Positions 6,001 to 39,484 of a stretch of 64,000 nt of DNA are shown piece after piece. The stretch covers positions 434,001-498,000 of the forward strand of contig CBFFRP010000378.1 of NCBI GenBank assembly GCA_965644295.1, read 5' to 3'. Source of the DNA: Paraphysomonas bandaiensis. Taxonomy: Eukaryota > Protista > Chrysophyceae. The notes under the pieces are model-generated. The model was not told where the DNA came from, did not search any database, and was given only the letters and a program-made list of their open reading frames with translations. Each line of letters begins with the position of its first letter. Positions within the stretch are counted from its first letter, which is position 1. Position numbers and translations under genes: made by a program.

Positions 6001-6392
6001 TAAGAGTGTTAATTGGTGCTTGAAATGTTGTAACTTTTTTGAATGAGTATAGCTTTTCTTGCTTTGCGACGCGGGTTTCCTCTCCACTTAGAAGTAAATG
6101 GTGCGAGTATAGGTTCTTTTTTTGAAGACATTTTAAAGGTATGTACGCAATTTGTACTCTTCATACCCCGTAAAGTAGTTTGCAATAGGTTGAGATAGCT
6201 GAAAGCCATGATGTGTTTTTAGAACGTGGGATACAAAGTCGTGACCCAACCCCATTAGCTTCCCCAAGGGATGTAGGGACGGCATCTTCTGGAGTACGTA
6301 AGATAGTGCGATGTCAGCCTTCCATATCATCCGTTCTTGAAGATCGAGATAGGAATGACCGTGTGCCAACAAAGACCGATATGGGACTGTAA
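1..6392 (+). CDS. Large multi-exon WD40-repeat protein with probable C-terminal EF-hand-like region; 5' end lies outside the window
   Basis: WD-like segments GHRHSVVAV...SVDEVGTVKVWNL, FTGTQSGLVLMYD, IAVSGADGTVRVLDF and LLGADSQGRLTLW are separated by GT-AG introns. A late exon reads EDLKKMFDDLYNDINGTV. The last exon reads VEIAESHDV...TDMGL to TAA at 6390-6392. It could be more than one gene. Confidence 0.65.
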
Positions 6393-6557
6393 TAATGGGA
6401 ATACATCTTCAGTAACTATTTTTAAGGAATTGGAATAATTCGCCGCTCCATATATTTCAATAGCAACTCCTTGTTTATTTATATTGAACGTCTTATTATT
6501 AGAGTAGACTTGAGCAATGAAATACTATATTATTGTAGTCTAATGTTCTAATAAATA

Positions 6558-6810
6558 CTGATGCTATTTCTCTGCTATTTAACGCTACGAAAGCTCTTTG
6601 TGCATCTCTGCTAGTACTAAGCGCAACTGATTTCTCGCTCTATCACTCAAAGCAAACGCACTGAGCAAGCCGAATGTTGGTATACCTGACATCTGTTAAC
6701 TTCAGGATTTCTGAGTTCTTAAGGTGAACAGCCCGGATGCTTGCTTGACTTCAGCAGGCAGCCCAATACCCCTGTTACCCTTGAGGCGGGCACATTTGCG
6801 GATGCTAGGC
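6558..6810. repeat. Dispersed repeat family A, partial copy
   Basis: Shares tatttaacgctacgaa, ctcaaagcaaacgcac, gaatgttg.tatacc and aggtgaacagcccggat with the copies at 11497, 55007 and 55664. Confidence 0.85.
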
Positions 6811-7364
6811 TCAGCTGCTCTTCTTAATTTAATTGGTACGTATGCCAATTTAGTAGGAACAAATGGACCAATTTTAGATTAGGAGGAGCGTAGGATAAAT
6901 TTACTAGGGACAAATATATTTTCGCTGTATATCGACCACCACACAGGAATCGCACTACAGTGGAAAAAGGAATATAAGGGTTAAACGGAGAGCAGTTATG
7001 AAGCAATGGTACTGGAGAAAATACTTGGAATTATTTAATTAACACAGAAAGCACACGTCGCGTTCAACATCGTAAACAATTGTTGCCAATTGAAACGTGC
7101 TGAATTTGCAACGGGTGCAATCAAAAAAATTAGAAGCAACCCCCAAAACATGACTAGAATATCATATCATTCCACATACGAAAAAACTTGAATTTACAGT
7201 ACAACACGGAATGCTCTCTATTTGATACTCTAGATACCAAAAGAACAAAAACTTTCAAAAGTACGAAATACACAAATAAGGGCTATAGTACACGGTCAAT
7301 ATCACACCAACGATCAAAGAGGGACAGTACAAAATAACAAACTGGGACAGTTTGAAGAAGAAGT

Positions 7365-7690
7365 TAAAGAACAAACATAATAAGAGGCCAATGCACCAAC
7401 GACAAAACGTTGAACCACCCTGCACTCAAGAAATAACATAATAAGAGGCCAATGTACCAACGACAAAACGTTGAACCACCCTGCGCTCAAGAAATAACAT
7501 AATAAGAGGCCAATGTACCAACGACAAAACGTTGAACTACCATACGTTAAGGAACAAACATAATAAGAGGCCAATGTACCAACGACAAAACGTTGAACTA
7601 CCATAAATTAAGGAACAAACTCAATGAAGGTTGCGGTTTCAACAACTGAACGATAAACCACCATACGATAAGGAACCAACTCAAGAATGG
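7365..7690. repeat. Tandem repeat, ~61 bp unit, 4 good copies plus 1-2 degenerate copies
   Basis: Unit core aacataataagaggccaatgtaccaacgacaaaacgttgaac recurs at about 7375, 7436, 7497 and 7557. Confidence 0.95.
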
Positions 7691-7723
7691 ATAAAATGTG
7701 AAGGCAAAATGTGGTGTTGAATG

Positions 7724-8437
7724 TTAGGACATAAAACTGTCAATAGACGGCCCATATAGATCGCTGTGAGACGTCAGTCTCCTCCGATAGTTATCAATTA
7801 TAGCCTTCTCTTCACAATTAAGAACATAAACATGAATATTATCGACACGATTTGTTCCATTGTAAGGGTCTTCGACATAACAGTCTACTTTCGATTTGAA
7901 ATTGGTGACCACACATATAATAAGAGATAAAGGTTTGAGAGGGGACGTCACTTTTAAAAGTTCGGCAAAACACCGCCCAAGAATTTCGAGAGAATATTCG
8001 TTAAAACGATAAGTCCAGATGTAACGAAGGCAACAAACGACACGTAATGCTTCTTCAACCTTCATTGACTCTCGCGGTCGCCGCGCTGGGTCCACCCACG
8101 GGAAAATAGCCATCAACTTAAGCCCCAATGTCTTGACAGTATATCTGCAATCAGTTTTTGGCAATGTAAAAAGTTTCGAGAGGAGTGTTTCATCATCCAA
8201 CTTAAATTCATCGACGCTATGCGCTTCATGACATAACACTTGTAACGATTCGGCTATAGATGCCTTTGTTACAACTTCATTAACTAATTGACGACAGCGT
8301 CTTTTCTTTCTCTGTGAGGATAATGAGTCATCACTGTCCTCTGCATCCATTACACTGTATGTCCTCCTGATTGCATTTGAAGGTATATCTGAAGTATCGG
8401 AGCAGAGAGAGAGGTATTCGAAATGATCATCATCCAT
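7724..8437 (-). CDS. Hypothetical 237-aa intronless protein, possibly carried by a mobile element
   Basis: Open ORF with an acidic N-terminus and a basic NLS-like stretch (QRKKRRCR). No recognised domain. The tandem repeat follows directly. Confidence 0.45.
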   Translation of the reverse strand: MDDDHFEYLSLCSDTSDIPSNAIRRTYSVMDAEDSDDSLSSQRKKRRCRQLVNEVVTKASIAESLQVLCHEAHSVDEFKLDDETLLSKLFTLPKTDCRYTVKTLGLKLMAIFPWVDPARRPRESMKVEEALRVVCCLRYIWTYRFNEYSLEILGRCFAELLKVTSPLKPLSLIICVVTNFKSKVDCYVEDPYNGTNRVDNIHVYVLNCEEKAIIDNYRRRLTSHSDLYGPSIDSFMS

Positions 8438-8981
8438 AGTTGTAGAGAGTTAGTTAATGTATATATCTTATGATATGTAGATATATATATGGTGGATGTG
8501 GGATAATAATAATGTATGGAGAGGCACACATGATTCCCATGTGTTCTTTTCTACAGACCCATTTAGAAACTGAAAATCTCTGTCCCAAAATAGCCCCATA
8601 TTGGGTGTGTCAAAAAGGTAGGATTTTAGACTAAAAACTCCTGTTTTTGTGATGGAGTAAGAAGATTGCACACAAACATTGCATCATGTGTAAGAATTCT
8701 TAGGTGATATACAGTACTGTATTCAGCAGTATTATTGTGAAGGATTTCTGAGCATATTCTTTGACATGGAACACTGGTATACAGTATATACAGGAGTAAT
8801 ACAGTATATGTGTTCTATCTATTTGTTCTTGTATTCAAATATACACACATTTATATACCGGTATGCTGGTATACTGGCTGGTATACCCACACAACACGTA
8901 GCTACTGTATGTATGTATATATATGCCATCTCCCTGCCCTATCCATATATATACACCTCGAGACCCTCATATATAACACAC

Positions 8982-10573
8982 ATGAACTCTCAATCAATCT
9001 CTATACCTACCCTCGTAATAGATGACACTGAACCTGTCGAACAAGACACAGCAGACTCTGAAGATCTCATTGATCTCCAATCCCTCTTATTACCAGAGGG
9101 ATCATTCCCACATCATGTCTCTCAATTCAGTGTATCTTATAATAAAAAACTATTTAATGGATGGGTAAAACAACCATCCGCATGTTGTGCAGCTGCATCT
9201 GTAGCTGGTGCTATCAATTCATTGGCTGATATTCATCGATCAGATCATCGATCACTGAACCATACGGATATATTATATGTATATATATCTATTATGGAAC
9301 GTTCAATTGATCGTAAAAAGAAATCATTTGAAAGATGTTTAGGGGCTCCAATCGATAATTTATTAACTAAACTCATTGCGGCTTTATTGGAAGCTAAAAA
9401 ATTGGCTACCAAAAAAAAGACCAATATAACATCAAAGGCATCTGTTACTAAACATTTAAAGGCTATTTTACTGGAGCATTTACAGGAAGATGAGAATAAG
9501 ATTAAGAACTCAGAGAATGTTGCTAGTAGTGATGTAGAAATTAATTCTACTCCTTGTGCTATGCAATTGCTCCATGAACTGATAAAGACGGAGGAAGAGG
9601 CGGGAGATACATGTATGGAGGATGTGTGTGTCGTGAAGGACTCGAGGGATGATAAGGTAGGCATCATTGATCCTACTGGTGTGCATCAACCCTTTGTCAT
9701 CGTTTGCTCTGTGTAATTAATGTGTCTGCATGTGGGGTTTATATCAGGACGTCGAAGGGGATGGCGAAGATGAAAATGAAGACGAGACACCTACCCTTCC
9801 TACGGCTCCCAGCACTACGAAGACTGCGAGACCTCTCATTCACAACGCTTGGGACTGGAAATCGGCACTTGCTGACCTTTTAAAGAAAATATTCGGGCTG
9901 CAAAAGTTGAATGCAACGAAGGCATCGACGGCTCCCATTGGGAATTGGTGAGAGCATATATATCTATGGTGCTGTAAATGTCACATTGCGTTAATATAGG
10001 GGAATACTCTCCGGGGTACAGCATATGGTTGAAATATGCGGAATTCCTACCAATCATATCACAGCAAAGCTCTTTATGGGTAAGGGATCGCTTGCAAGCA
10101 AGAACAAGTTGGAGGTTCCTTTGTCTCGATCAGATACACCAGACACCATTCGTAAGCAATGGGATGCACTCCGTGCGGCTTTTTTGGATCCAAATCGCGT
10201 CCTCTTGTTTCATTTAAAAAATCACTATGCACTGATATATGCCTTGAGAGAATGGGTAGATATTGGGGAAGACGGGAAAACCATTGTGGTACGGGAGTTG
10301 TTGACCGCAAGACGAGGTCAGCGTCCTACAGTTTGGATGCCTTTTCCGGAGGCTCGAGAGACGATGCTTGGTTGGGAAGGATATAAGCTAATGACATTTA
10401 GTAGGGCATCTGATGAAGCCGTTGAATCCTTGCGCTCCATCAAGAGTAAATTGAACGAAATATTTGGGACTGTGTGCAACTCTGAAACTAATATAACCCA
10501 AAATGATTGTGACGTGGTCGGCGCTACAGATTGTAGTGAAACTAAAGGGGCGCCAATTGTCAGTGGTGCGTGA
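8982..10573 (+). CDS. Putative papain-fold (peptidase C39/BIVM-like) cysteine hydrolase, 3 exons
   Basis: Candidate Gln/Cys motif KQPSACCAAASVAGA and His motif LLFHLKNHYALIYA, followed by LLTARRGQRP. Introns at about 9657-9748 and 9948-9999. Confidence 0.6.
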
Positions 10574-13468: not shown

Positions 13469-16400
13469 TCAGTCAGATACCCATCCTTCATCTTCTTCAC
13501 TTTCAGCTTCTTCCATTTGAGTAACTGCGCAGACAAACTTCAGTACAAAACTAAAACTATACGGGATAACGCATACAATTGCAGAACAAATTCGACAAAA
13601 AAATAAATAAGAGCTTTTAGAACTTACACTTTCTCAGATTACCCATACGCTGCTTAAACGTGGCCACCATTTCATCTGTGGTTTGCGCCTGGTTTTTCTT
13701 GTATTGGTCGAATGCGTTCAGTACTTGACCAGGAGTGACTCCTGTCGAGGTCTCGACTGGCGTATCTGCGGCGGCTGGCTGAACCGCTTTGGCTTTCTTT
13801 TGCGCCACTCTTTGCTTCTCATCAGCAGCTTTCTTTGCTTTTTCTTTCTTTTCGTTCTAAATTCATACTTAGTCAGTGCTAAATTATACTTGCAATGGTA
13901 CAACACCTCTTCCCTCCATTCCTCCATATCAGTCAAACATTTCTTATACAGCAATGCGAATCGAGTCATTAAATCAAAAAACATCTGGTTTACATCGTCG
14001 CCTCCTTGTGCTTCAGCTTTGTCACCAAAAAACTTACGAATGTCATCGGCTTCCTTTCTGACCTCACCCATTGTATCATGTATAATTCGAACCCTATATG
14101 CAGCATACATAAAAACACTACGTCAAAAATATACAAAGCAAACCTAATTTCAGCGTCTCCAATGAAGTCAACTGCATTACTACGTCAGAGTCATATCTAA
14201 AAAACAGATTAAATATACCTAGCATGTTTCTGAGAGGAACACGAATGTCATCATCAGAAATTTCAACACTTGCCACTAACTCTACTCAGAAGAAATTAAA
14301 GTAACATTAGGAACATTCGATCAAGCGCACCATTCTTTGCGTCGGTCACTTGCGCTTCCAAATTTTTTAAGTCAATTTCCATTTGAGATAGTGACAACTA
14401 CACATCACCGTATTATATTTTGGCTACGACGTTGCGTGATATCTATACCTTTGGCGCCTGCCACACAGAGAGCCACTGTCCGTAAAAAGGAGAGTCATTG
14501 GGATACTTTTTGCCATGCTGCTGGACAACAAAATGCATCAAACTCTCTTTTTTGGAACCTGTTTTCTTGATGTTGACAAGTTTCATCTGTATTATAAATA
14601 CATATAATGAGATACTTGTTGGTGCACAGAAGCCGTAAATAAATACCAATGCATCCAGTTTCATTCCGTGAGCTTGACCACGAGACGTTCCGCCATTCAT
14701 ATAGTTTCCTACATCAGTGTTTTATACAGCAATATATTAGCCACGTTTCAATCATACCAACTGCGAGGATGAGAGACAACACATGCTTCAACGATTCTTC
14801 GCATTCAGGTCGCTTAAACTCCGTGACTACAACAGTACAGAAAATGAGAGGGAGTAGTAGAATGTACTTTTACAAATTTCACTCACTTGCGTTGGAAAGA
14901 ATCTCTAAATCTTCCCACACCTTATCCGCGTTGTCTTCCCAGACGAGAATTGCAGAATGCAGCTTAAGCCTTTTCTCAAGCCTTGGAATATCCACAAGAT
15001 GCAAAAACAGCCTTAATTATTAGAGTACTTGTGAGCACACTTCCGCTGTCACGGTTTAAACATTACCTTCCTGGAGTATCTAACTCATGCACATTTCCGT
15101 CAAAAGCCTTATAACAAGGTTAATTAAAAATTCGAGTTGTCTCCAGTTATATATACCCTAACAAGTGCGGTCTCTTCCGAGGTAGGAACAAGTGGAATTA
15201 AGGTTTCTATAAAAACGTATATAACGAAAATGAGAGTTGTATTCATAAATGTTTTACCAACAATATCATGCGTCAGCACAGCAGGATCGAGGTCAACTAT
15301 CATTTGCGCAATTGCTACAATCCATATCAAATTAATACTGATCAAGACAAAACTGGCACACGAAACCTTGAGGCTGCATTCTTAACCTTCCACAAGCGAT
15401 CGATACATTCTATATTCCCCACCTTAAGAATAAAATAGATTGACGTATTTAACTGACCTGCGTACGCTTTCCATCAAAAAGAGATATGAACTTGGGCTTC
15501 TGTTTCTTGACAACAGCGGTTGCACTAGATTCTATTAACAAATAAAAGAAAGTAAATCCTAAAAAAACTACACACACAAACAGACCCTTCGATTTATTAG
15601 AAGACTCGTCAGAAAATCCATTCTCAAGTTCATCAAACGGTAACACAGGCTCTTCAATGGTAGCCCATACTGTTGCGGCAGCCTACATCTGCGTAAGAGT
15701 AAAACGCATGAGAACGACAGTTACCTCTGCAGCTTTCAACTTGGTCCAAAATAACCCCTTCATTTTCTTTTTAGGTGCAAGCTTTGGCTTTGACGGTAAC
15801 CCTAATATGCACATAAACACTTGCTGAAGTGGACTAGAGTATTACCAGTGTTGGATGTCCCTGCAGGCGCCTGTCCAGGTAATGGCGGAGCGACCCCAGA
15901 TGTGTTGCCGACCTGACCAGGAAGTGGTGGAGGAGGAGGAATATCCCGAGAGCTCTTCACTGCTGGCTTGGTCTGAACTACAGCAGCTGAAGGTGGAGGG
16001 CCAGTGCCTCGACCGACACCGCGACCAGCAAGCTGTAAAATTGCCAGATTTAAACTCAGTTACTGAGGAAAGTATATCATACCATGGCTGCCATTGCAGC
16101 CCCTGCCCCTCCTGAACTAACTCCTCGTCCAGCACCACCACGTCCGCCACCACCACGTCCACCTGATCCCCCGCCTCTTCCAGCAAGCTGCATTATAACA
16201 ATACATCAACCTGAAAAATGAAACGTGTGCACAAGTACCATGGCTTGCATTGCAGCAGCAGCGCCACCCCGTCCTGAGTTGTCTGACCCTGCTGTAGTCG
16301 GGGCTGCGGGAGGTGGAGAACCACGTTGAGCAAATAATCCGGACAATGCGGCCTTCGCGTCAGCTTTAGAGGTACTCTCCTCGGTTACTGGAGTAGCAGG

Positions 16401-19400
16401 TGCTGCTACACTGGTTGCCCCATCTGATCACAGATACAACTTACAAAGCTTCAAAGTAATTCATATGTAATACCAGTCTCAGCAGGCATCGGCATTTTGG
16501 ACTCTTCACCACCCTGATTCTTAGCTTGTTCCATTTTCTCTGCACAATAAAATTAGAATCCTTCACTGTAATACGTGTTACCTACGTCGCTTGGCTGCAT
16601 CCAAAAGACTTCGCCAGACCTTTCGTTGTCCTCCAGATTGTGAACTTTGCTAAGACAATGTCACAACCATTATCATACAGCACTAGTATATACCAGTTGC
16701 TTTCTCAATGCCTCGTTTTCAGCTTTCAAGACCTCCAACTCTACGAGAAGTGGAGGCATAATAAAATCACGAAACCATAATTTGAAGATGCACCTGTCCG
16801 AATGCTGGGGTCTTGAATACCAGACATCGTTACTTTCGGTTTAGCAGCTTTCTATAGTTGAGAATTCCTTATGAATACATAATTTCTTTCTCCCTCACAC
16901 ACATACCTTGCGAGTAGTGCCTTTCTTGGCAGATAACTGATATTCGAAAGCATTTAGAGAGTTAACAAAATACAGTATATGGCTTACCAAACGAATATTA
17001 GCTAAAGTGCTATCAAGAAACCCAATGCCTGGAAATACACCAACCATAAATTATAGTTTCTCGTGGAAGATTCTTACCATCATCGCTGCTAGCAGGGAGT
17101 ATAGCCAATTCCTTGTAACAAAGGTAAATGAAATATATTAAGTTTTCATCGCTAGTACCTGAAGCATCATTCGCAGCTTTTCATCGTGGCCAACAGTTTG
17201 TAGTTCGAACTTTACATATCTGTTGGTGCATATAAAATACATACGAATGCGATTAACAAGATATACCTCGACAGATCAACGATCTGGTTAAAAGCACTAT
17301 TGGAACACGCCAAGACAATCATTTCTTTGTCTTCAGTTTCAATGCGCTTGAATATATCCAACTACATGGTGCGTATTATACGGGCCCCTCATGATTACAT
17401 AAAATTCTTGTTCCTTACCTGCTTTTTAAACTCGGCTTGGGCAGAAATGATATCTTCACGGGAAGTTTCCTTATTCTCTAGCCTTCGGTAATACAGTGTT
17501 ATTGGCAACAATCAAAGTATATACATTTTTGTGTACGGACTTGTAAGCCGTTCGTGCTTTGCCTGCAGCTTGCATGGAAGCATTTAACGCAACCACCCAC
17601 TTTTCTTTCGTTATCTTGTCTGCGACCTATAAACGGCATCAGAAACCGACAAAATAGAAAGCTTATCCACACACCCCAAGGTTATATTTGGTACCATCCG
17701 AGCAAGAAATAACAAAACAATGTGTGAATAGAGCCTGTCATATATAAATTAACAAGCTTCATAGGTATAGGCTACCAAGACCTGAATATTTTCAGCGGTG
17801 GAGTAGCTAAGAATTTCCACAACACGTGACATGGGCTGGCTACCATTAGGGGCACAGTTAATGTCCTATGATAGTAACACATTATCATTGCTGCAAGATA
17901 CAAATTTATTCATGATAACCTTCTCACGGTCTTCTACATGATACCTACATAAAACATACATATGAGTCAATATAAATTACAGCTGCAGCGCACTCACCAA
18001 GAAAATACACCATCAACAAGTTGATACCAGCGATGTTTCACACCCTATTAATCGTCAAAAACGTAAACCAGATATCGTAGAATAAGGAGTGGCAATATAT
18101 AAACGGGGCCATCTCACATCTTTTGACTTCTTGGCTTCCCAACAGTATCCTGCCATAACTCCATGCCCAGGATATATTTCAGTGATACTGAAAAAAATGA
18201 GACGACATTGAAAAATACACAGCACAACTCACCCGTCTTCGGCAATGCCGCGTGTAATGTCATTGTACGAGATTTTCATTCCCGCTTGAAATCTACACAA
18301 AATACGTAACGGATGAATAAATGCGAAACTTGTTTTCTAACTTGATAGTTTTCGGGATTTCGTGTTGCTTTTGCTCGGCAGTAGATATGCGTCTTCCAAA
18401 AGCCTTTCCTTGCGCATCACCACTGTACTCACGAAAACTGGACAGTACACCAGAAAGCACCTAAAACGAGCCACGCGTCAAAAATATAATATATTCATGA
18501 ACAACTTACGTCATGAATGTTTACAGCAAGCAAATCATTGCGAGTCGATATTCGCTGTTCCAAATCTACACAACATTGTTACACCACCATCGTAGGCATG
18601 AATGGCGATCACATACCAGTATCGTGATTGATTATTGCATTCATAAGACCAATTATGGCAGCTTGAACTTCAGCATCCTGATACACGCAAAATGACAGGA
18701 GAAATATATAAACATTTAAGCATCGAACCTCTGTCGTTAGTGCATTGGCTAGAATGGCATAAGGTAACTCGTTTCTACCACACAACACATTACCAGATTC
18801 AGAACAAAGCTATACGGTACCTCTTTCGTGCAAGATGACGGAACCCCATCACAGTCTGCCAGACAGCTTCACTTTCTCCAAAAGAACAAACCACCGATAA
18901 CAGATTCAACACCTAGTACATAGTGTGACCACCATTAGAATTCAACATCTTATCCCAATGCTTCCAACCCATGATATCAATGCAACAAAACAACATAATA
19001 ACGCGCAAATTCAATATATAACCACCACAGTTATTTACAGTGAACAAACCTCCATCGCAAGGGGCTTATATTCAAATCGAAGTGACATAACAAACGCATC
19101 AATTGCGCCTGGAAATATTATCAGCTGATTGACAACGATACAGGTCAAAAAATCCACGACATGTACCTCTAGTGTCGATAGCTGTCTTGATGCCGCCTTC
19201 TTTCATAATGTGTATTCTGATACAGAATTTAAAAAACGCATAACTACAGAAAACACTGTAACCCACAGGCAGAGTAGCAATTGATGTAGTGCTGCGGCAT
19301 CCGTTTCCTCCAGCGGCTCCTGGAACATATTTAGAACGATAATACCACGCTGAGAGAGTAATACTACACAAAGCCGACATCAACGTCCATGCTACTATGC

Positions 19401-20615
19401 AACCAACACACGGATCAGTACACTTTTCACCTTCTCAAGCCGATTATCCATGTTCTCCACTAGCACTGATATCCCTGATATTCAACCGACAATGACATCT
19501 TATTCTCGCATGATATGTATACACACCTCCAGACGTGCAGAAATTACTGAGCCAGTCTTCATTCGAGTGCTCTATGCGGTACTTGCACGTAAGAAGTCGA
19601 ATAGAGTCTATTGACCTCTCCGAGTCCATTATAGTTACCATTTCTTCATCTTCCTTCGAAAAATGGGGATGGTCGTCTAGGACACTGTACAAATTGTTAT
19701 GGAGAAATACTACACAATGCTATTCATTTACCATAGTGATCGCTGTACATGCTGAAACCTCTCCATAGGAGTGTAACTACTGCTTAGGGATTCACGGAGC
19801 GATTCAGTCACCTGTAGCTTTCGCAAGAGTTCCGCGAAGTAACCGTCAATCTCTTGCAACACGTCCGGATCAATCGGTTTCGGTTTCGGGTTTGCTTCGG
19901 AGTCAAACTCCTGCTTCTTCTTTTTTGCTTTTGCTTTAGCATCATTGTACTTATTGAGCTCTTTCTGATACTCCTCGAACATGCCCTCAATTGATTTGAG
20001 CCGAAGCAGCAGAGTTCGCTTCGGTTTTGGAGGATACGTTGCTGCCAGTGCAGAGACGAGCTCTTCTTTGTTCTTAAGAACCGTATAATCAATATTCTTC
20101 AACGTGCAAAAGTACTGCAGGTCCTCGATCTTGAAGCTGCTCAACAGAGTATGATCGGGAGGAGGCTGGGGACGATCTTTCTTGGGGAGTGGTAAGGTCG
20201 TGAGCTCCTTCCCTTTCGATCCGCTCTTATTTTCAGTACCAGTCACAGATTCAGTCGACAACTGCTTTGGTTCAGCATTTAAATCATTTGACTTTTCTTT
20301 GTCGGATGTCTGTACACCCTCCATGTCTGCATATGCAGTTGTGGGCATCTCTTGTGTATCACTCTTCATACCAGACAGAGTCTCAACAGACATATCTTGA
20401 GGGGACTCTTCCTTGCCATCATCTTGATTCATCTTAGTCTCATCACACTCTACCCCTTCAGATCCTTCTTCTTTACCAGATCCAGCAATTAACTGTATAG
20501 AAATGAATATATATTTATATAAACTATAAAATCAAATATATCTTACATTATTAATTTTTCTAGCCATTTTCGTCAAGCGAAACTTTCTTGGTTTTGATTT
20601 AGCTTCGTCTGACAT
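13469..20615 (-). CDS. Formin (GBD/FH3 - PH - coiled coil - FH1 - FH2), many small exons
   Basis: ATG at 20615 (MSDEAKSKPRKF). GBD-like HSNEDWLSNFCTSGG. PH-like RWYQLVDGVFSWY...EKWVVALN at ~17570-18170. Pro/Gly-rich FH1 at ~15850-16400. FH2 motifs PKKKMKGLFWTKL, ISLFDGKRTQ, NGGTSRGQAHGMKLDAL and SLMHFVV. TGA at 13469. Confidence 0.92.
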
Positions 20616-20996
20616 GGTAGTAAGATTAGTTACGTCTATTAGTAGAGGATATCCAGGTTATGCATGTAATGTGAATATTCGAGCTACCATAACACACAAT
20701 CTCGTTCGATCTTTTGTTTTTTTGTTGTATCATTGTACATACATACTACGACTTGTATGTATGTATATCCGTGTGTTTTCAGGTAATTCCACTAGTAAAA
20801 TTATCAACCGTACAGTCCGTCTACATATTGTATATTTTTCTGCTATCCGTATTCCTCAACTGAAATATCCCTCATATGGGATAAAATACTTCTTAAAGTG
20901 ATTGATATCTCGTTAGAACTCTTCACGAATTCGCCTTCACCAAGAAACAGACTCCTTTAACTATCTTTTCACATTATTTCTATTGCATCCCTTGAG
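20616..20996. promoter_or_regulatory. Probable bidirectional promoter between the formin and NAA80-ACTMAP genes
   Basis: 381 bp separates two divergent ATGs. Inferred from geometry only. Confidence 0.5.
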
Positions 20997-22385
20997 ATGC
21001 CATTGCAATTAGTGGACTGTAAGAGTGTATCAGATGATGTGTTGTATGATGCAGCCGAGTTGTTGTCATCTTATTGGACAGGATCGATTGCTACAAGAAA
21101 ACATCAGATGCTAAGCAACACTGGAAGTTATGTATTTGTTAAGGAGGATAATAACGACAATCATCCCCAACAAAAGGGAATAGGTCATGTAAAAGTTATA
21201 CCATACAGTGCAACTGGTGATGATGCATTCGGTCCTTGTCTCTGTGGAGTAGTAACATCCGTTATCATTGCAGAGGAATATCGTGGTCAAGGTTATGGAT
21301 ATCGTCTTATGCAGATGTTAGAGGATGTGGCCATCAACCTTGGCTATTGCTTCCTGTACTTGTGGACCAGTGACGCTGTCGAGTTTTATTTGAAAGTTGG
21401 CTATCGCAGATGTGAAAGGGTTCACGAAGCTGTGTCTGCTTTGAAATCAATGAGTTCAACCTCCATATCTAAGTTGGAAAGTATGATATCCAATAAGGCA
21501 GCCGTGGTACTTGATTTGGATGGTGCGGGTGGCACTATGTCCACTGTGTACATGAAGAAACGTATCAGAGATGAGGTTCCGCTGGAACCCTGGACTATAA
21601 GCGAGTTGAGAGCCCAATTAGTCGACGATATTTCTCCGTTAGTAAAGAAAGACAACCTATTTGTTGATGTAAATATAAATCATGTTCCATGGGGGAGACA
21701 AGTTGGACCGTCTTGTGGTATACAAGCGCTTCGAATGACAGCAGCTTATCTTAATCGTTCAACTTTATCGCCAAGTAAGTCCCTTCTACAAGAGGCTATC
21801 GATAAAGGATACAGTTCAGAGGGTGAAATATTTGATATCAATCATATATCAGCACTTGCTGTCTCCATTCACCTGTCTGCTAGGGTATGTCCACTCTCTG
21901 TACTAGGTTTTAATGGGATCCGTGATTTGCTCTCCACCTCTCCAAAGTCAGTTATAATATTACCATACGACAAAGGCCCGTCTTGTGAGCCATGCACTGA
22001 GGGTGGACGGCGCGCACACTATGCAGTGATATGCGGTGCAGCATGTCGGTACTCTGCTGATGTAGTCGGATGTAGTCGCGATGAACGTGTTCGTGTGATT
22101 ATAGATAGTGATAATGCCATCCAGGACTGGCCACATGATAATTCAACCGAACAATCGAACGAATTCTTAATTGCGCTACAAGGGCTGTCAAAGCGCCCCA
22201 TTATTGCATCGTATTCACAATGGAAAGAGTCTAATGCACAGCTTTTTGACAATTCTCTTTGCAAAGACAGTTCTACAATTGATGATAGAGGTAAATTGGC
22301 TAGGCAAAACATAGCGAACAGCAAGTGGATGATTCCTACTGCGGGGCCTAACCTTTCAGGAATGTGTGTTATTGTGTCTTCATAA
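20997..22385 (+). CDS. Fusion of NAA80-like GNAT actin N-terminal acetyltransferase and ACTMAP (C19orf54)-like actin maturation cysteine protease
   Basis: Single 462-aa ORF. N-half: DAAELLSSYW..S.ATR, IGHVKV, VTSVIIAEEYRGQGYGYRLM, LYLWTSDAVEFYLKVGY, TVYMKKRI. C-half: QVGPSCG.QALRM, LLQEAIDKGYSSEGEIF, ILPYD...EPC..GG.RAHYAVI.G, LQGLSK, KESNAQL, NLSGMCVIV. Confidence 0.85.
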   Translation: MPLQLVDCKSVSDDVLYDAAELLSSYWTGSIATRKHQMLSNTGSYVFVKEDNNDNHPQQKGIGHVKVIPYSATGDDAFGPCLCGVVTSVIIAEEYRGQGYGYRLMQMLEDVAINLGYCFLYLWTSDAVEFYLKVGYRRCERVHEAVSALKSMSSTSISKLESMISNKAAVVLDLDGAGGTMSTVYMKKRIRDEVPLEPWTISELRAQLVDDISPLVKKDNLFVDVNINHVPWGRQVGPSCGIQALRMTAAYLNRSTLSPSKSLLQEAIDKGYSSEGEIFDINHISALAVSIHLSARVCPLSVLGFNGIRDLLSTSPKSVIILPYDKGPSCEPCTEGGRRAHYAVICGAACRYSADVVGCSRDERVRVIIDSDNAIQDWPHDNSTEQSNEFLIALQGLSKRPIIASYSQWKESNAQLFDNSLCKDSSTIDDRGKLARQNIANSKWMIPTAGPNLSGMCVIVSS

Positions 22386-23136
22386 ATTTTAATCCAATAT
22401 AGCGATTAGTATTCATTATACTCTTCTCTGCAGTACATATGTACGTACTGGCATACTGGAGTGTCGGGCCGAAAACTATCGAAAATTGAATATTATATTC
22501 TCAACTTTACGAAGAATTACTATGGGCACAGATATAGAAGTAATTTATGTGTTCATTTTATACGGATGAATATTAAATAAAGAACTATTACTATATTTCT
22601 AAAGGTAGTACCACTGGTAGCTTTGTTCTTTGTATATTGTAGAATCATTTTGCCGAATATTTTACTTTCCACTCTTATAACATAACACTCTTAGAATACG
22701 GGAAGAATTTTTTTATACTGAATATACACTACACAACTAGCAGAATAATATGCTCCATAACATCATAACATATTGTCAGTGGGACTACAAACAAAACACT
22801 CAAGAGGAATGAGAAGGTTAGCACGTATTATTACACACCAATGTATTTAAAAGACTAAGATTGGGTATGTTTCGCAAACATGTGACTTGTAAGTATACTC
22901 GAATGAGACGGGAAATATTATTCAACCTAGTCAAATTGGTTGAATTACCTAATCACACTATTTTTGGTGGAATAACCTAGTCAAAGTAATAAATGATTCA
23001 ACCTAGTCATTTTTTTTAAATAATAAGGATCTCTTGTAAATTATGTCACAAGCTCACAACAACACGTTGCCTAATAGTCACACAGATAAGACGATTCCTA
23101 ACTATATAATCCACTTGCATCTCTGTGTTTATCATC

Positions 23137-24118
23137 TCAAGCGGAGGAAGATGCAATGTCGGCGATGTTGCTTTTGTTCGACGCGATGCGCCTCTCCAAG
23201 TACTCCTTTCTGCCCTCCAAGTCCCTCTGGGTCTTGCTGAGCTTCTCACTCTCTTTCTGCAGGAAGGTTTCAATCGAGTCCCTGGGCTCGCGGAGGAATG
23301 CCTTGCCTACTGTGCGGTATAGGGGAGTTTCAGCGTCATACGTGTCAATCTGCTGTTTAGTCACAAGATTGGAACGGAGATCACGCTGGCAGGAGGCAAG
23401 GGACCCCTGCACACCGCGGAGATCGCGAGCATAATTTGAGGTCTGCTCCTGGAGCTCCATCAACTGTTCACATATTCAGTGCACACATAAGTTGGGAAAA
23501 CATTTAAGAAAAATTTCAAATCAATAAAATCTACGAACCTCACGGCGCTGGGACTCATCCAGCTGTCTTGGGGCACGAGCCTTCTGCTTCGTAAGGGCTG
23601 CCTTTTTAGCCCGTACCACACGGAGCTGCTTCTGCAACTGCTCGTTTTCTATTGCACATCCACACCAGCATAATGATAAGGGTAGACTAGGAATTTATGT
23701 ACGGCACCTGAATCTATTCTGAGGGCCTCCTGAAGAACTTTCTGGGCATCGTCGAAATTGCCCAGCTCGGTGTGGGCAACAGCGAGACGGTAATATCCCT
23801 TAACAAAAGATGGGTTCTTACTGATACACGTGGATGCATCTTGAATAGCAGCATCCCATGCTTTCAAAGAAGAGTGACAAGCACTGCATTATCCATCAGT
23901 GATAGCCACGACTAATAGAGTAATAACAAACCTTCTATTCGAATAATAAATAGCATTTTCTGGGTCACAAGAAATAGCATTAGAATAGTGGCCGATAGCT
24001 TCTTCATAATTTTTGGAAGCAAATGCTTCATTTCCTAGTCTATTAATAGGGTTAGTTATATATATTACAGTCATTAACAGTTATGTGATACATACTTCTT
24101 GTGATCCTCTGCTGACAT
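23137..24118 (-). CDS. STI1/HOP-type TPR domain fused to beta-type prefoldin subunit (PFDN1-like), 5 exons
   Basis: Splices as MSAEDHK-LGNEAFASKNYEEAI..YYSNRSAC..KGYYRLA..DSENEQLQKQL..QRRE/LMELQ..LYRTVGKAFL..KEYLERRI. The two GT-AG junctions linking TPR to prefoldin (~23707 and ~23538) keep the frame. Confidence 0.85.
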
Positions 24119-24491
24119 GTCTTTATTTGCATCTGAATCCATTATAGTGGGTAAATTATTAATGTGGGTGTAGTTGATGGAAGGGTGTGATAAATGTTTG
24201 TGATTATGGTTCTATCGGGTGAATAGCATGTAACATACATGTATAGTGAGTGGATGATTATTGGTACAACAGCAGCTCCAGCTGTATGCAGAGTTGTGCG
24301 GTATGTGTATACATAGTGCAGAAGCAGTGTGTGATATGTATATATATGAACTGTATACAGCTGTATATACTGTATATAGGGTATAGTACCCCTCATACTG
24401 GCTGTTCACCGCGCACTCTATACGTACCAAAGCACGGGGGGTGTGTGTATGTATGTAAAGGGTGGGAGGGGTGGAGAGGCAGGCATGACAG

Positions 24492-28083: not shown

Positions 28084-29404
28084 ATGGTACCTTCACTAGA
28101 TCAATCATGCGAAAATATTAGAAATGTGCTTGCACAAATAGAAATTGAGTTACCTAAATCTTCTCATACTCATGTAACCGAAACATTAGAACAATTAAAA
28201 GTTAAACTGAATTTATTACTTAATCGATTGAAAGAAATTCCAGTCGACTCATCAGACATTGAAAATGAGGTTTGATATTCTTCATTTTCTTGCTTTTCTA
28301 AATATGATTATTGTAGATATCTCATGCATCGTGTGAACTGATGGAAGCCAAATCATATCTCACTCCCGAGTACCTCTGTGGCATCCCTGAAGAGGAATGG
28401 GATGGATGTGTGCCCCCATCACTGGTGCTAATGGACATTCCTTACGAAGTGCGACAGGGCCAAGGTGGATGGGAATGTAGCAACCAATTATTTGATATTC
28501 GCGGGCCCTCTTACCTTTACGACAACGTTAAAGTAAATAAGATATTCTACTTTTATCATTGACTGTAATCATCTATACAGGTCGCATCCCAGGCTCCTCT
28601 CTTTCATATGAGGGGAGTTCAGATGGTTGGGGTCAACGAACTACGCCCCCACATTGCTTTGGAGCCTTGGACGGCCTTCCCCAAAGAAGACGATGGAAAC
28701 GAGTGGCTCATACTTAACTATATGGTGTGTGCACCTCTATGGTGAATTGTGAGAGTGAAAGCTTTTCACAGGTGCCCGGCAGAAGTCCCTTCCAAATGAT
28801 TTGTTACTACACCGCGTCTAAGGAAGCCAAGCGCGTCATAAGCCCCACAAAAGGGGACAGTACCTGTTCCACTGATGAAGAGCAGCCAACCTCTGAAGGA
28901 TGGGAGAATTGTCTCCGAAAGTTCTGGGAAGCTGATCAGGAATATTGCGATGCCAGGTTTAAGATTATCCCCAACGTGGTGAGTACTGTTTCTTATTTTT
29001 TCAATTTCGCATTAGCCACTCTTTCTTCTGTTAGTGTAATCATATTGTTTTCAGGCGTCTGGACCCTGGTTGGTACGAATGGCAGTTGGTAATAAGCCAG
29101 CGCTGACGGGAATGAAAGTGAAGCAACTCTATACCCGCGGGGACCGATTTTTCGAGGTTGATATGGATATTGGGTCGTCCGCTGTAGCTGCCAGGGTCTT
29201 AGGACTGGTGAGTAGAGCCTGTAGTAGTATTGATAAAATATGCTTACAGTGGTATATCAGGTGCGCGATTTCTGCAGCGTGCTGACTGTTGACGTGGGGG
29301 TTACCATTGAGGGCCAGAGTGACGAGGAGTTACCGGAGCGTGTTCTGTGCCGCATGCAGTGGAAAGGAGTTGACTTCAGCAAAGCGCAGCCTCTTGATCG
29401 CTAG
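28084..29404 (+). CDS. EDR2 C-terminal (DUF1336)-domain protein, multi-exon
   Basis: W...FDIRGPSYLYDNVK, DARFKIIPNV, WLVRMAVGNKPAL, FFEVDMDIGSSAVA and IEGQSDEELPERVL. TAG at 29402-29404. Confidence 0.88.
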
Positions 29405-30045: not shown

Positions 30046-30743
30046 TTACTTCGAACCTGTTGATATCTCTTTCGGAGCAGCAGATTTTTCACTCTGACTA
30101 TTCAGACTGAGTGAATCGACACCAGCAGTCACTTCGTCTGCGCTTTTTGCACTATCATCCCCATCGACTGGCTTGTTACCAGATTTTTCCTTTGAAAAAT
30201 TACATCTCATGGCGTAAGCATCCTCACCATCTGCGTAATAACCTCGTTCTATGTCTGTTATTTCATACCCTAAGGTTTGGGAGTACAGGTGGTAGGCTGC
30301 TCTGTTTGTGTAACGAACATGCAGACTACAGTACTCGGCATTGAATGATTCTGCCATTCGAGCATGAGCCATTTTCATTAGCTTCGTAGCAATCCCACAC
30401 TTTCGGTTAGTTTTGGCCACTGCTAGTGACGTAATATGACCATGAGGAACATCCGCATCTTCTTCCATTTTAGCAAGAACATAACCAACAATCTTAACAA
30501 ACACATGAACAGACATCGTTTAATATATAAATATATCTCACCTGTCCCTTATGGTTTTCAGCAACATGAAGTAGCTGTGGCCAAGATAATTGATGGTACA
30601 TATAATACTTCATCTGATAGTTCTCAGGAAGGCACCAGAGATTAGTAGTTTGCATTTGCAATAAATCCTCAGCCTGTAAATTTATTACTCACTTGTGGAT
30701 TAGATGCATTGAAACTTACCGTAGCTTGTCGAATACACACCAT
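30046..30743 (-). CDS. NAA10: N-alpha-acetyltransferase 10 (NatA catalytic subunit, ARD1), 3 exons
   Basis: [67 protein letters not shown] and [11 protein letters not shown]. Confidence 0.97.
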
Positions 30744-38165: not shown

Positions 38166-39484
38166 CGTTGTTACGCTGTCATTGTACAGTATCATGATCA
38201 TGTCGTTTGAAAACACCTCAAAACAGAAAGATTGTAAGGAAGGTATATATATATATGTTCTTGGTACATGGGTTTATATGATCATGTTTTATATATCTTT
38301 CCTTTTTTGTATGGCTTTTGTCGTCCTGTGTGTGTTAACTCATCAACAACAAAGTATCACAACATGGTGTTCATATAAACCCAATTACCTTTTAAATCTT
38401 AGATATCACTATTCCTCGGCTCTTACAGTCTTTCCCTTTTGAGGTGTAGTAGAGTATTTTTTTTAGTTTCAAAGGTAATTATTATTGTGGTTAATTTTAT
38501 AGACAGAATATAAGGATTAGGTCTCAGTAGTACTGTAGGTATATACTCATTATTATTTCAAGTATTTCTGAAGAACTAAATTTTCATATTATAACACTTT
38601 CTTCTCTATGTAAATATCTGCATTGCAAGAGCAATATTATAGATTGCATGATGCTGAACAGAAGAATATGTTGTATGAATACTTTATGCGTCAGAAACTC
38701 ATTAAGATTGAGTATATACCTACTCATAGCAAGAGGGTGTCCCAATGTTCTACATTTCTATCCCATAAATGATGGAATAAAGTGATATGCCAGACGATGT
38801 AGTCAAACAGGTCAAACATATCATGCGTCGCGAGAGAATTAAAATGTGGAACCACTCACCACGTGTCACGGCCACATCACAGATGAGCAATCATGCGAAC
38901 ATTGTTTAGTTTACGAAATGTCAACAGTACTCACCGTTTAGAAATATCGAGTTGATTTAGTACCCTTTGTAAATGTCCTCAGCGACATCTTTTCGGAAGG
39001 AAAGTATATAGTATAGTATATCGTCAAGTTCTACACCACATTTATTATTGCTTTTTAATAAAACTCAAGCAACCCGCCTATGTTGATATTACAGAGCACA
39101 CAGAAATAACACTTTATGACGAACGTATACAACTGCAGTATTCATAGTGTCCTCATCCATAGCCATTAGATATGGGAATTGACTTAACCGTATGTTTATT
39201 ATATGCTGGTCTTGTGTAAACTAAATACGTGGAGTAATAGAGCAAAAAAATATAATATGCAAGCTGCAATATAACACAACATTCTAGCTATGCTTAGGTA
39301 CATTGTAATGTTCGATATATTAGAGCTATGCTTCCGCCATTACTGTACACCAGTTTGTTGGCTCTCTTATGGGTAAAAATATGTATAAGGAGTACTATTT
39401 GCTTCAATTATCCTGTCACAGACCCCTACTTCTAACTTCTAAGTGCTGGGTATACGGTATACACACCGAATGAGAAGATCGTCT

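What the first reader, a model, noticed from the sequence alone, without database searches (positions are those of the whole stretch)
13469..24118. Apparent actin-biogenesis micro-cluster: formin, NAA80-ACTMAP and TPR-prefoldin side by side
Seen: three consecutive genes. The formin and NAA80-ACTMAP are divergent with 381 bp between ATGs, and TPR-PFDN1 converges ~750 bp downstream. Known: prefoldin delivers nascent actin to CCT, ACTMAP/NAA80 mature its N-terminus, and formins polymerise it; N-terminal acetylation is reported to affect formin-driven elongation. Inference: a fold-mature-polymerise neighbourhood with a shared promoter, which is uncommon in eukaryotes. Chance adjacency is not excluded.
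Basis: partly seen in the sequence, partly recalled or inferred. Interest (0 to 1): 0.78.

Follow-up and report, generated by a model that had tools for sequence, protein, structure and literature searches.

The report
Formin and actin-maturase head-to-head gene pair
In this protist genome a formin gene and a gene fusing the two actin N-terminus-maturing enzymes sit back to back on a shared short promoter, an arrangement kept in two related lineages, while the prefoldin gene next door looks like a chance neighbour, so there is no good case for a three-gene actin cluster.

Summary
The region carries three real, transcribed genes:
- a multi-exon FH1-FH2 formin on the minus strand (CDS 13469-20615);
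- an intronless NAA80-like GNAT plus ACTMAP-like protease fusion (20997-22385, plus strand);
- a spliced Hop-type TPR plus prefoldin-1 gene on the minus strand (CDS 23137-24142).

Only 268 bp lie between the two transcripts' 5' ends.

The orthologous formin lies head-to-head with the fusion gene on contigs of two other, divergent lineages (fusion proteins 34-36% identical). It is absent beside the fusion in every other locus with enough upstream flank (about 11 lineages), including the lineage closest to the window with a readable flank. Prefoldin is adjacent nowhere else, and it is the genome's only PFDN1-like locus, which suggests a housekeeping gene.

One control weakens the case for selection. 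On the same foreign contigs an unrelated head-to-head pair (unknown protein and ABC transporter) is also kept in this genome, while the tandem and convergent neighbours are not. Retention may therefore reflect the general durability of shared promoters.

Random placement puts three actin-theme loci within 11 kb in 1-6% of genomes, before correcting for the many themes the scan could have flagged. Co-expression could not be tested. The scan noted this stretch before, on the same DNA.

The parts
13469..20615 (-). Formin coding region (many short introns): N-terminal basic/SAP-like segment, a lineage-conserved N-terminal region, a short FH1, FH2 and an acidic tail
   Evidence: FH2 Pfam hits exon by exon and a weak FH1 hit. 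Hits to an FH2 HMM built from this genome's paralogues. Start codon and first introns taken from transcript contigs. The orthologue in L006 matches only this locus in the genome.
20547..20657 (-). Formin exon 1 (5' UTR plus ATG at 20615); intron 20493-20546 follows
   Evidence: Spliced contigs of runs X1 and X4 reach 20656/20657 and skip 20493-20546 with CT..AC ends, which is GT..AG on the minus strand. Frame check.
14446..16059 (-). FH1 (15805-16059) and FH2 exons (14446-15841)
20658..20925 (.). Shared divergent promoter region: the 268 bp between the outermost transcript contig ends of the two genes
   Evidence: No RNA contig covers 20684-20870. The formin contigs end at 20657 and the fusion contigs begin at 20926/20947.
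20997..22385 (+). Intronless NAA80-like GNAT plus ACTMAP-like cysteine protease fusion (462 aa); mRNA 20926-22582
   Evidence: Pfam. NAA80 is the best PDB match. The RGQGYG acetyl-CoA motif, Cys240 and His341 are invariant across 23 homologues. Unspliced transcript contigs. Single copy in the genome.
23137..24142 (-). Hop/SGT-type TPR domain fused to prefoldin subunit 1 (5 exons; mRNA 22934-24200)
   Evidence: Pfam TPR_1 and Prefoldin_2. PDB matches to PFDN1 and to HOP/STI1 and SGT2. A single spliced transcript in 4 runs.

Best explanation
The region holds three ordinary, separately transcribed genes. The formin and the NAA80-ACTMAP fusion form an ancestral head-to-head pair that fires from one short divergent promoter region: at most about 270 bp between the 5' ends of the transcript contigs here, and 96-178 bp between start codons in the related lineages.

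The pair was inherited from the common ancestor of a stramenopile sub-clade. It has survived mainly because a breakpoint inside so short a shared promoter would damage both genes. It is not an obligate unit, since the lineage closest to the window with a readable flank has broken it.

The shared promoter probably gives the two genes loosely coupled transcription. That may be mildly useful, because formin-driven elongation is faster on N-terminally acetylated actin.

The TPR-prefoldin-1 gene is a housekeeping chaperone subunit that lies downstream in this lineage only, by chance.

Shown: gene structures, domains, transcription, geometry, and conservation or loss of linkage. Inferred: shared regulation, the enzymes' action on actin, and the reason for retention.
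For: - Gene models and transcripts.
- The orthologous formin lies divergent and immediately upstream of the fusion in L006/L007/L008. Window formin exons hit L006 8251->3150 on the minus strand with up to 75% identity, and the fusion sits at 8678-10243 on the plus strand.
- The same arrangement occurs in L035.
- The N-terminal motifs match, for example ALAATYPPKPKR against ALMATYPPEHER.
- The reciprocal search of the L006 formin exon finds only this window in the genome.
- No other window gene matches L006.
- The neighbours of the pair in L006 map elsewhere in this genome: Metallophos on contig C91 (49% identity) and the ABC transporter on C130 (50%).
- Control: the L006/L035 head-to-head pair '538-aa protein <-> ABC transporter' is also head-to-head on C130 (L045 4297-5367 minus, 6182-8231 plus). 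The tandem junction (fusion->Metallophos) and the convergent junction (Metallophos->|<-538 aa) are not kept.
- No FH2 lies beside the fusion in Hondaea, in diatoms, or in the 16 JGI metagenome loci and the ENA contigs.
- In the sister lineage L009 another gene sits 383 bp upstream. Its best homologue here lies about 318 kb away on the same contig.
- Prefoldin is adjacent nowhere else, and this is the only PFDN1-like locus of four Prefoldin_2 loci.
- Random placement gives any three actin-theme loci within 11 kb in 1-6% of genomes.
Against: - Taking the fusion gene as a given anchor, the chance of having one of at least 12 formin genes as an immediate neighbour is only about 0.1-0.2%. The theme match is therefore not trivially expected.
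- The neutral-retention control rests on a single other head-to-head pair.
- The functional link is real in animals: mDia1-driven polymerisation is about twofold faster with acetylated actin (PMC5924898), and NAA80 and ACTMAP bind profilin-actin, which is also the substrate formin FH1 domains recruit (PMC11735805).
- Co-expression was not measured.
Confidence: 0.55

Rival explanations
1. Selected two-gene module. The formin and the actin maturase are kept head-to-head because co-regulation matters: this formin's elongation activity depends on N-terminally processed, acetylated actin. A common promoter would match the supply of mature actin to formin-driven assembly.
For: - The pair is conserved across lineages whose fusion proteins are only 34-36% identical and whose other neighbours are scrambled.
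- The intergenic spacers are very short: 96, 178 and 381 bp between start codons.
- The nominal chance of a formin neighbour is low.
- A biochemical link between actin N-terminal acetylation and formin elongation is published, as is binding of profilin-actin by NAA80 and ACTMAP.
- Actin here starts MADDDVQ, an acidic N-terminus of the kind these enzymes process.
Against: - An unrelated head-to-head pair on the same contigs is conserved too.
- The pair is broken in the sister lineage L009.
- It is absent from all other fusion-bearing lineages sampled.
- L006 and L035 are collinear with each other, so they amount to one independent comparison.
- There are no expression data.
Confidence: 0.28
2. 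Three-gene actin-biogenesis cluster. Prefoldin (fold), NAA80-ACTMAP (mature) and formin (polymerise) would be held together as a functional neighbourhood, possibly extended by NAA10 about 6 kb further on.
For: - The three genes are consecutive and all transcribed in the same cultures.
- NAA10 lies at 30049-30519. It would be expected to acetylate Ala2 of the MADDD actin.
- The nominal probability of three actin-theme loci within 11 kb is 1-6%.
Against: - Prefoldin is adjacent to the fusion in none of about 25 foreign loci, including those that keep the formin.
- The prefoldin gene is convergent and has its own transcript, so it shares no promoter with the pair.
- It is the only PFDN1-like locus, and its TPR is a general Hsp70/Hsp90-type adaptor, so it should serve all prefoldin clients.
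- NAA10 is a general enzyme and is separated from the trio by other genes.
- The theme was chosen after the fact, among thousands of notes on this genome.
Confidence: 0.05
3. Pure coincidence with no shared regulation. Two independent core promoters happen to lie back to back, and the conserved adjacency is simply residual synteny that has not yet been broken.
For: - Synteny between L006 and L035 extends over five genes, so some residual synteny exists in this clade.
- No sequence motif is shared by the three intergenic regions beyond low-complexity words.
Against: - Between this genome and L006/L035 only the two head-to-head junctions survived, and the two other junctions did not. This pattern points to the shared-promoter geometry rather than to random residual synteny.
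- Spacers of 96-381 bp leave little room for fully independent promoters.
Confidence: 0.12

Closest known systems
Conserved bidirectional (head-to-head) gene pairs in eukaryotes
   Same: Divergent orientation. Under 300 bp between the 5' ends of the transcript contigs. The pair is retained across lineages while tandem and convergent neighbours are reshuffled, and a second unrelated head-to-head pair behaves the same way.
   Different: Here the two partners share a plausible biochemical theme: a formin and an enzyme that modifies the formin's substrate, actin. This pairing has not been described in the papers I could search.
Animal actin N-terminal maturation pathway (ACTMAP protease followed by NAA80/NatH acetyltransferase)
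   Same: The middle gene carries both domains, NAA80 is its best structural-database match, and the Cys/His and acetyl-CoA motifs are conserved. Actin here has an acidic N-terminus after Met-Ala.
   Different: In animals these are two separate genes, and the pathway is described as restricted to animals (PMC11735805). Here they are one polypeptide in a protist, with homologous fusions in diatoms and labyrinthulids. Activity on actin is untested.
Eukaryotic functional gene clusters (fungal and plant metabolic clusters, nematode operons)
   Same: Neighbouring genes with a common functional theme.
   Different: There is no conserved three-gene linkage, no polycistronic transcript (three separate mRNAs), and no enrichment beyond what post-hoc selection can explain.
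Canonical prefoldin subunit 1 (PFDN1) of the hexameric prefoldin complex
   Same: Prefoldin_2 coiled-coil domain, with best match to human PFDN1. It is the sole PFDN1-like locus, alongside PFDN2-like and PFDN4-like loci.
   Different: It carries an N-terminal Hop/SGT-type TPR domain in the same spliced mRNA. That fusion is the subject of a separate scan note and was not pursued here.

Membership tests
Formin | FH2 domain | tested here: met
   PF02181 hits on exons 14446-14721 (E 6e-10, 39 bits, above the 34.8 cut-off), 14882-15016 and 15686-15841. The genome-own FH2 HMM covers positions 2-270 across four exons.
Formin | Proline-rich FH1 upstream of FH2 | tested here: inconclusive
   The Drf_FH1 hit (E 1e-3, 19 bits) is below the cut-off. 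The sequence shows IPPPPPLPG and APPLPG tracts in 15805-16059. FH1 is short.
NAA80 / NatH | GNAT fold with acetyl-CoA motif, closest to NAA80 among N-terminal acetyltransferases | tested here: met
   Pfam Acetyltransf_1 and Acetyltransf_7. The best PDB hits are human NAA80 (E 1.9e-7) and fly NAA80 (E 3.9e-5), ahead of NAA30. G99 and G101 of RGQGYG are invariant.
NAA80 / NatH | Acetylates the processed acidic N-terminus of actin | not testable with these tools
   The only indirect support is that actin genes start MADDDVQ.
ACTMAP | ACTMAP-like C-terminal protease domain with conserved Cys and His | tested here: met
   PF21646 E 4e-22. Cys240 (GPSCG) and His341 are invariant in 23 sequences. Their catalytic role is inferred.
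Prefoldin subunit 1 | Beta-type prefoldin domain that matches PFDN1 best | tested here: met
   PF01920 E 1.5e-13. PDB PFDN1 E 9.5e-6, with no other eukaryotic subunit listed. The other loci match PFDN2 and PFDN4. The PFDN1 margin is modest.
Co-regulated functional gene cluster | Linkage conserved in relatives | tested here: not met
   For the trio, prefoldin is never adjacent elsewhere. For the formin-fusion pair alone, the feature is met in the L006-8 and L035 lineages. It is not met in L009 or in about 10 other lineages.
Co-regulated functional gene cluster | Co-expression across conditions | not testable with these tools
   Only assembled contigs were served. All three genes are transcribed in X1 and X2, but contig depth cannot rank expression.
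Co-regulated functional gene cluster | Adjacency beyond chance | tested here: inconclusive
   Monte Carlo gives 1-6% for any actin-theme triple within 11 kb with 93-120 loci, and about 0.4-1.2 adjacent themed pairs expected genome-wide. This is not corrected for the many themes a reader could flag.
Bidirectional promoter pair | Head-to-head genes with under 1 kb between transcription starts | tested here: met
   The formin contigs end at 20657 and the fusion contigs begin at 20926, a 268 bp gap with no RNA coverage. True transcription start sites were not mapped.

The most novel reading that the evidence does not exclude
In a clade of stramenopile protists, a single-polypeptide actin N-terminal maturase (NAA80 plus ACTMAP, a pathway so far described as animal-only) is transcriptionally coupled, through a conserved shared promoter, to one particular formin. 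Production of mature, acetylated actin would then be co-regulated with the formin that polymerises it. If so, this would be a selected two-gene 'mature-and-polymerise' module.
Probability: 0.25. Interest if true: 0.6.

Novelty: new member of a known kind. Interest (0 to 1): 0.35.

Why it matters
If selection keeps the formin-maturase pairing, it would be genomic evidence from outside animals that N-terminal maturation of actin is functionally tied to formin-driven assembly. It would also point to one specific formin to test.

As it stands, the safer lesson is methodological. In these genomes head-to-head junctions outlast other junctions, so conserved adjacency of a divergent pair is weak evidence of shared function. 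The three-gene 'actin biogenesis cluster' should not be carried forward.

The more notable object in the region is the NAA80-ACTMAP fusion itself, which is covered by separate scan notes.

Tried and rejected
- **Shared promoter motifs.** I looked for k-mers shared by the three formin-fusion intergenic regions (window, L006, L035). Only low-complexity 6-7-mers turned up and no shared 8-mer, so this was uninformative.
- **Second synteny control.** I tried the gene pair at the left end of L006/L007. Both proteins belong to large repeat families in this genome, with 144 and 45 matches, so orthology could not be assigned.
- **Profile search for more fusion homologues.** It added only one new protein.
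- **P0002, the closest relative of the fusion.** Its contig leaves only 117 bp upstream, so it says nothing about linkage.
- **treekit tree.** A FastTree on trimmed alignments replaced it. Support for the clade joining the window/P0001 group with P0004/P0005 is only 0.52 in the first tree.
- **Contig depth as an expression proxy.** Rejected, as the tool itself warns.
- **Complex prediction of formin with the fusion.** Not run, because I do not claim that they bind.
- **Spliced protein models.** They were searched exon by exon, by reference only. The one joining step was a local frame check of formin exons 1 and 2 to place the start codon.
Full report
**What is in the sequence**

The window is G000:C378:434001-498000 of a 62.5-Mb eukaryotic genome. 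It has about 40% G+C and short GT..AG introns. Relatives of its proteins place it among the stramenopiles.

The flagged stretch holds three consecutive genes.

*The middle gene.* It is an intronless ORF at 20997-22385 (+), 462 aa.
- Pfam finds a GNAT domain (residues 44-137) and an ACTMAP-like_C domain (234-348, E 4e-22).
- Among solved structures the GNAT half matches human NAA80 best (6NAS, E 1.9e-7), then Drosophila NAA80.
- In an alignment of 23 homologous fusions, the acetyl-CoA motif glycines, Cys240 (GPSCG) and His341 are invariant. This fits two active enzymes, although activity is inferred.
- The gene is single-copy.

*The formin.* It lies on the minus strand from 20615 down to 13469.
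- FH2 hits fall in several exons.
- A short proline-rich FH1 lies in 15805-16059.

*The third gene.* It is on the minus strand, with CDS 23137-24142.
- It joins Hop/SGT-type TPR repeats to a Prefoldin_2 domain (E 1.5e-13).
- The best solved match of that domain is prefoldin subunit 1 (E 9.5e-6).

**Transcript evidence**

Three culture runs behave as transcriptome assemblies, and one polyA metatranscriptome also holds the region. Their contigs are spliced at GT..AG introns.
- The formin mRNA reaches 20656/20657. It has an intron at 20493-20546 and further introns at 19685-19731, 19474-19525 and beyond.
- The first ATG, at 20615, is in frame across the first intron.
- The fusion mRNA is unspliced and runs 20926-22582.
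- Only 268 bp, with no RNA coverage, separate the 5' ends of the two contigs. This is a classic bidirectional-promoter geometry.
- The TPR-prefoldin mRNA runs 22934-24200 with four introns. It is one transcript in all four runs, so that fusion is real.
- It converges on the fusion gene with about 350-390 bp between the 3' ends. It has its own promoter on the far side and cannot share the divergent promoter.
- The three genes are three separate mRNAs.
- Contig depths cannot be used as expression levels, so co-expression remains untested.

**Is the linkage conserved?**

I collected loci that encode homologues of the fusion, which are 28-38% identical by BLAST. The sources were an annotated Hondaea genome, two diatom assemblies, ENA and JGI metagenome contigs and Logan contigs.

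I searched all of them in two ways:
- with every open frame of the whole 64-kb window by tblastn;
- for loci L001-L025, also with an FH2 HMM built from six paralogous formins of this genome.

The results are as follows.

- *Formin, present in two lineages.* The orthologous formin lies divergent and immediately upstream of the fusion in L006/L007/L008 (one organism, three samples; protein P0004) and in L035 (P0005).
  - Exon-by-exon matches run collinearly along L006 from 8251 down to 3150 on the minus strand, with up to 75% identity.
  - The N-terminal motifs correspond.
  - The L006 formin exon finds only this window when searched back against the whole genome, which holds at least 12 FH2 loci.
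  - Start-codon spacing is about 96 bp in L006 and about 178 bp in L035.
- *Formin, absent elsewhere.* No formin lies beside the fusion in Hondaea (L001), the two diatoms (L003, L005), ENA contigs L002 and L004, the metagenome loci with usable flanks (L010-L025) or L036.
- *Prefoldin.* No prefoldin or TPR gene lies beside the fusion in any locus.

On a tree of the fusion proteins, the window groups with P0002 and P0001. That group is sister to P0004 plus P0005.
- P0002's contig has no usable flank.
- In P0001's contig (L009) a different gene, with a signal peptide, starts 383 bp upstream of the fusion.
- The best homologue of that gene here lies in a giant open frame about 318 kb away on the same contig.

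The simplest history is that the pair arose in, or before, the ancestor of this sub-clade and was later broken in the P0001 lineage.

**A control for neutral retention**

L006 and L035 are collinear with each other over five genes: formin, fusion, a metallophosphatase, a 538/638-aa protein and an ABC transporter. They therefore count as one independent comparison with the window.

In this genome:
- the metallophosphatase orthologue is on contig C91 (49% identity);
- the ABC transporter orthologue is on C130 (50%);
- on C130 the homologue of the 538-aa protein lies head-to-head with the ABC gene, just as in L006/L035.

So of the four junctions in the foreign block, both head-to-head junctions survived, and the tandem and convergent junctions did not. 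This is what one expects if short shared promoters resist breakage whatever the genes do. It is a single control pair, and a second attempt failed because the genes belong to repeat families. It nonetheless removes most of the force from 'conserved, therefore functionally coupled'.

**Chance**

Exon-wise family searches of the genome give:
- at least 12 formin loci;
- about 46 myosin loci;
- about 14 actin or Arp loci;
- 8 or more CCT loci;
- about 5 cofilin loci;
- 1 profilin locus;
- 4 beta-prefoldin loci.

That is about 90 measured loci, and probably around 120 once unmeasured families are added.

Random placement gives any three such loci within 11 kb in 1-6% of genomes, and about one adjacent themed pair per genome. 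Taken alone, the chance that the fusion has a formin as an immediate neighbour is about 0.1-0.2%. These are nominal figures. The theme was chosen after reading, among thousands of notes on this genome, and counting prefoldin as 'actin-related' is generous.

**The prefoldin gene**

The four Prefoldin_2 loci match PFDN2 (C89), PFDN1 (this window) and PFDN4 (two loci). This is therefore the genome's only PFDN1-like gene and should serve all prefoldin clients.

It is a general enzyme, and other genes separate it from the trio.

**Known biology that bears on the pair**

- Acetylated actin is polymerised about twice as fast by mDia1, and the effect is enhanced with profilin (PMC5924898).
- NAA80 and ACTMAP bind profilin-actin, and the pathway is described as exclusive to animals (PMC11735805).
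- Actin here begins MADDDVQ. This is compatible with removal of an acetylated Ala followed by re-acetylation of Asp, but that is an inference.
- I found no paper describing non-animal ACTMAP fusions or any formin linkage.

**Verdict**

The three-gene 'fold-mature-polymerise' cluster is not supported.

The formin-maturase head-to-head pair is real and shares a promoter region. It is conserved in part of a protist clade, but its retention is explained at least as well by promoter geometry as by function.

Probabilities:
- ancestral pair retained for structural reasons, with prefoldin a chance neighbour: 0.55;
- selected two-gene module: 0.28;
- coincidence with no shared regulation: 0.12;
- true three-gene cluster: 0.05.

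Spliced models were searched exon by exon only, and the joined proteins were not searched.

Noticed in passing
window 22910-22958: Many transcript contigs from all four runs break here, with unrelated loose ends on both sides and very high summed depth. It looks like a short repeated element between the convergent 3' ends of the fusion and TPR-prefoldin genes.
   Followed up: no
window 30049-30519 (-): An NAA10 (NatA catalytic subunit) exon, PDB E 2.8e-38, about 6 kb beyond the TPR-prefoldin gene. Other genes lie between, including one with an EDR2_C domain at 28718-29089.
   Followed up: partly
G000:C132:9879-10997 and 38218-39336 (L039, L040): Two identical conventional actin genes begin MADDDVQALVVDNGSG. 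This is an acidic N-terminus after Met-Ala, the kind of substrate an ACTMAP/NAA80 pathway would process.
   Followed up: partly
G000:C89, C363, C26 (L032-L034): Of the four beta-type prefoldin loci, one is PFDN2-like and two are PFDN4-like. No PFDN6-like locus was seen in the exon-wise search.
   Followed up: partly
G000:C506:10820-21334, C319:156175-163407, C66:26313-27884 and others: The protein of L006:850-1437 matches 144 places in this genome, often in long tandem runs. Many matches carry 2-8 in-frame TGA codons and no other stop. These runs often sit next to members of a second large family (L007:2-1042, 45 matches in giant open frames). Unexplained.
   Followed up: no
G000:C378:135308-136990 (-): A 6436-aa open frame holds three repeats homologous (35-51% identity) to the signal-peptide gene that replaces the formin upstream of the fusion in L009. 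It lies on the same contig as the window, about 318 kb away, which suggests an intrachromosomal rearrangement in one lineage.
   Followed up: partly
G000:C397:98794-103950; C298:604745-616304; C132:38218-48208: Other cytoskeleton-theme proximities: an Arp-like gene 3.3 kb from a Cpn60/TCP1 hit, an Arp-like gene 8 kb from a CCT gene, and actin 7 kb from a myosin. Counting the window's formin-prefoldin pair, that makes four pairs within 10 kb, against 1.4-2.3 expected on the full genome length. This is not significant.
   Followed up: partly
G000:C432:165151-169647 (-): A formin FH2 (166072-167028) is flanked on both sides by Cofilin/ADF-H hits in one 1564-aa open frame. This matches an earlier scan note on a formin with ADF-H domains at both termini.
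   Followed up: no
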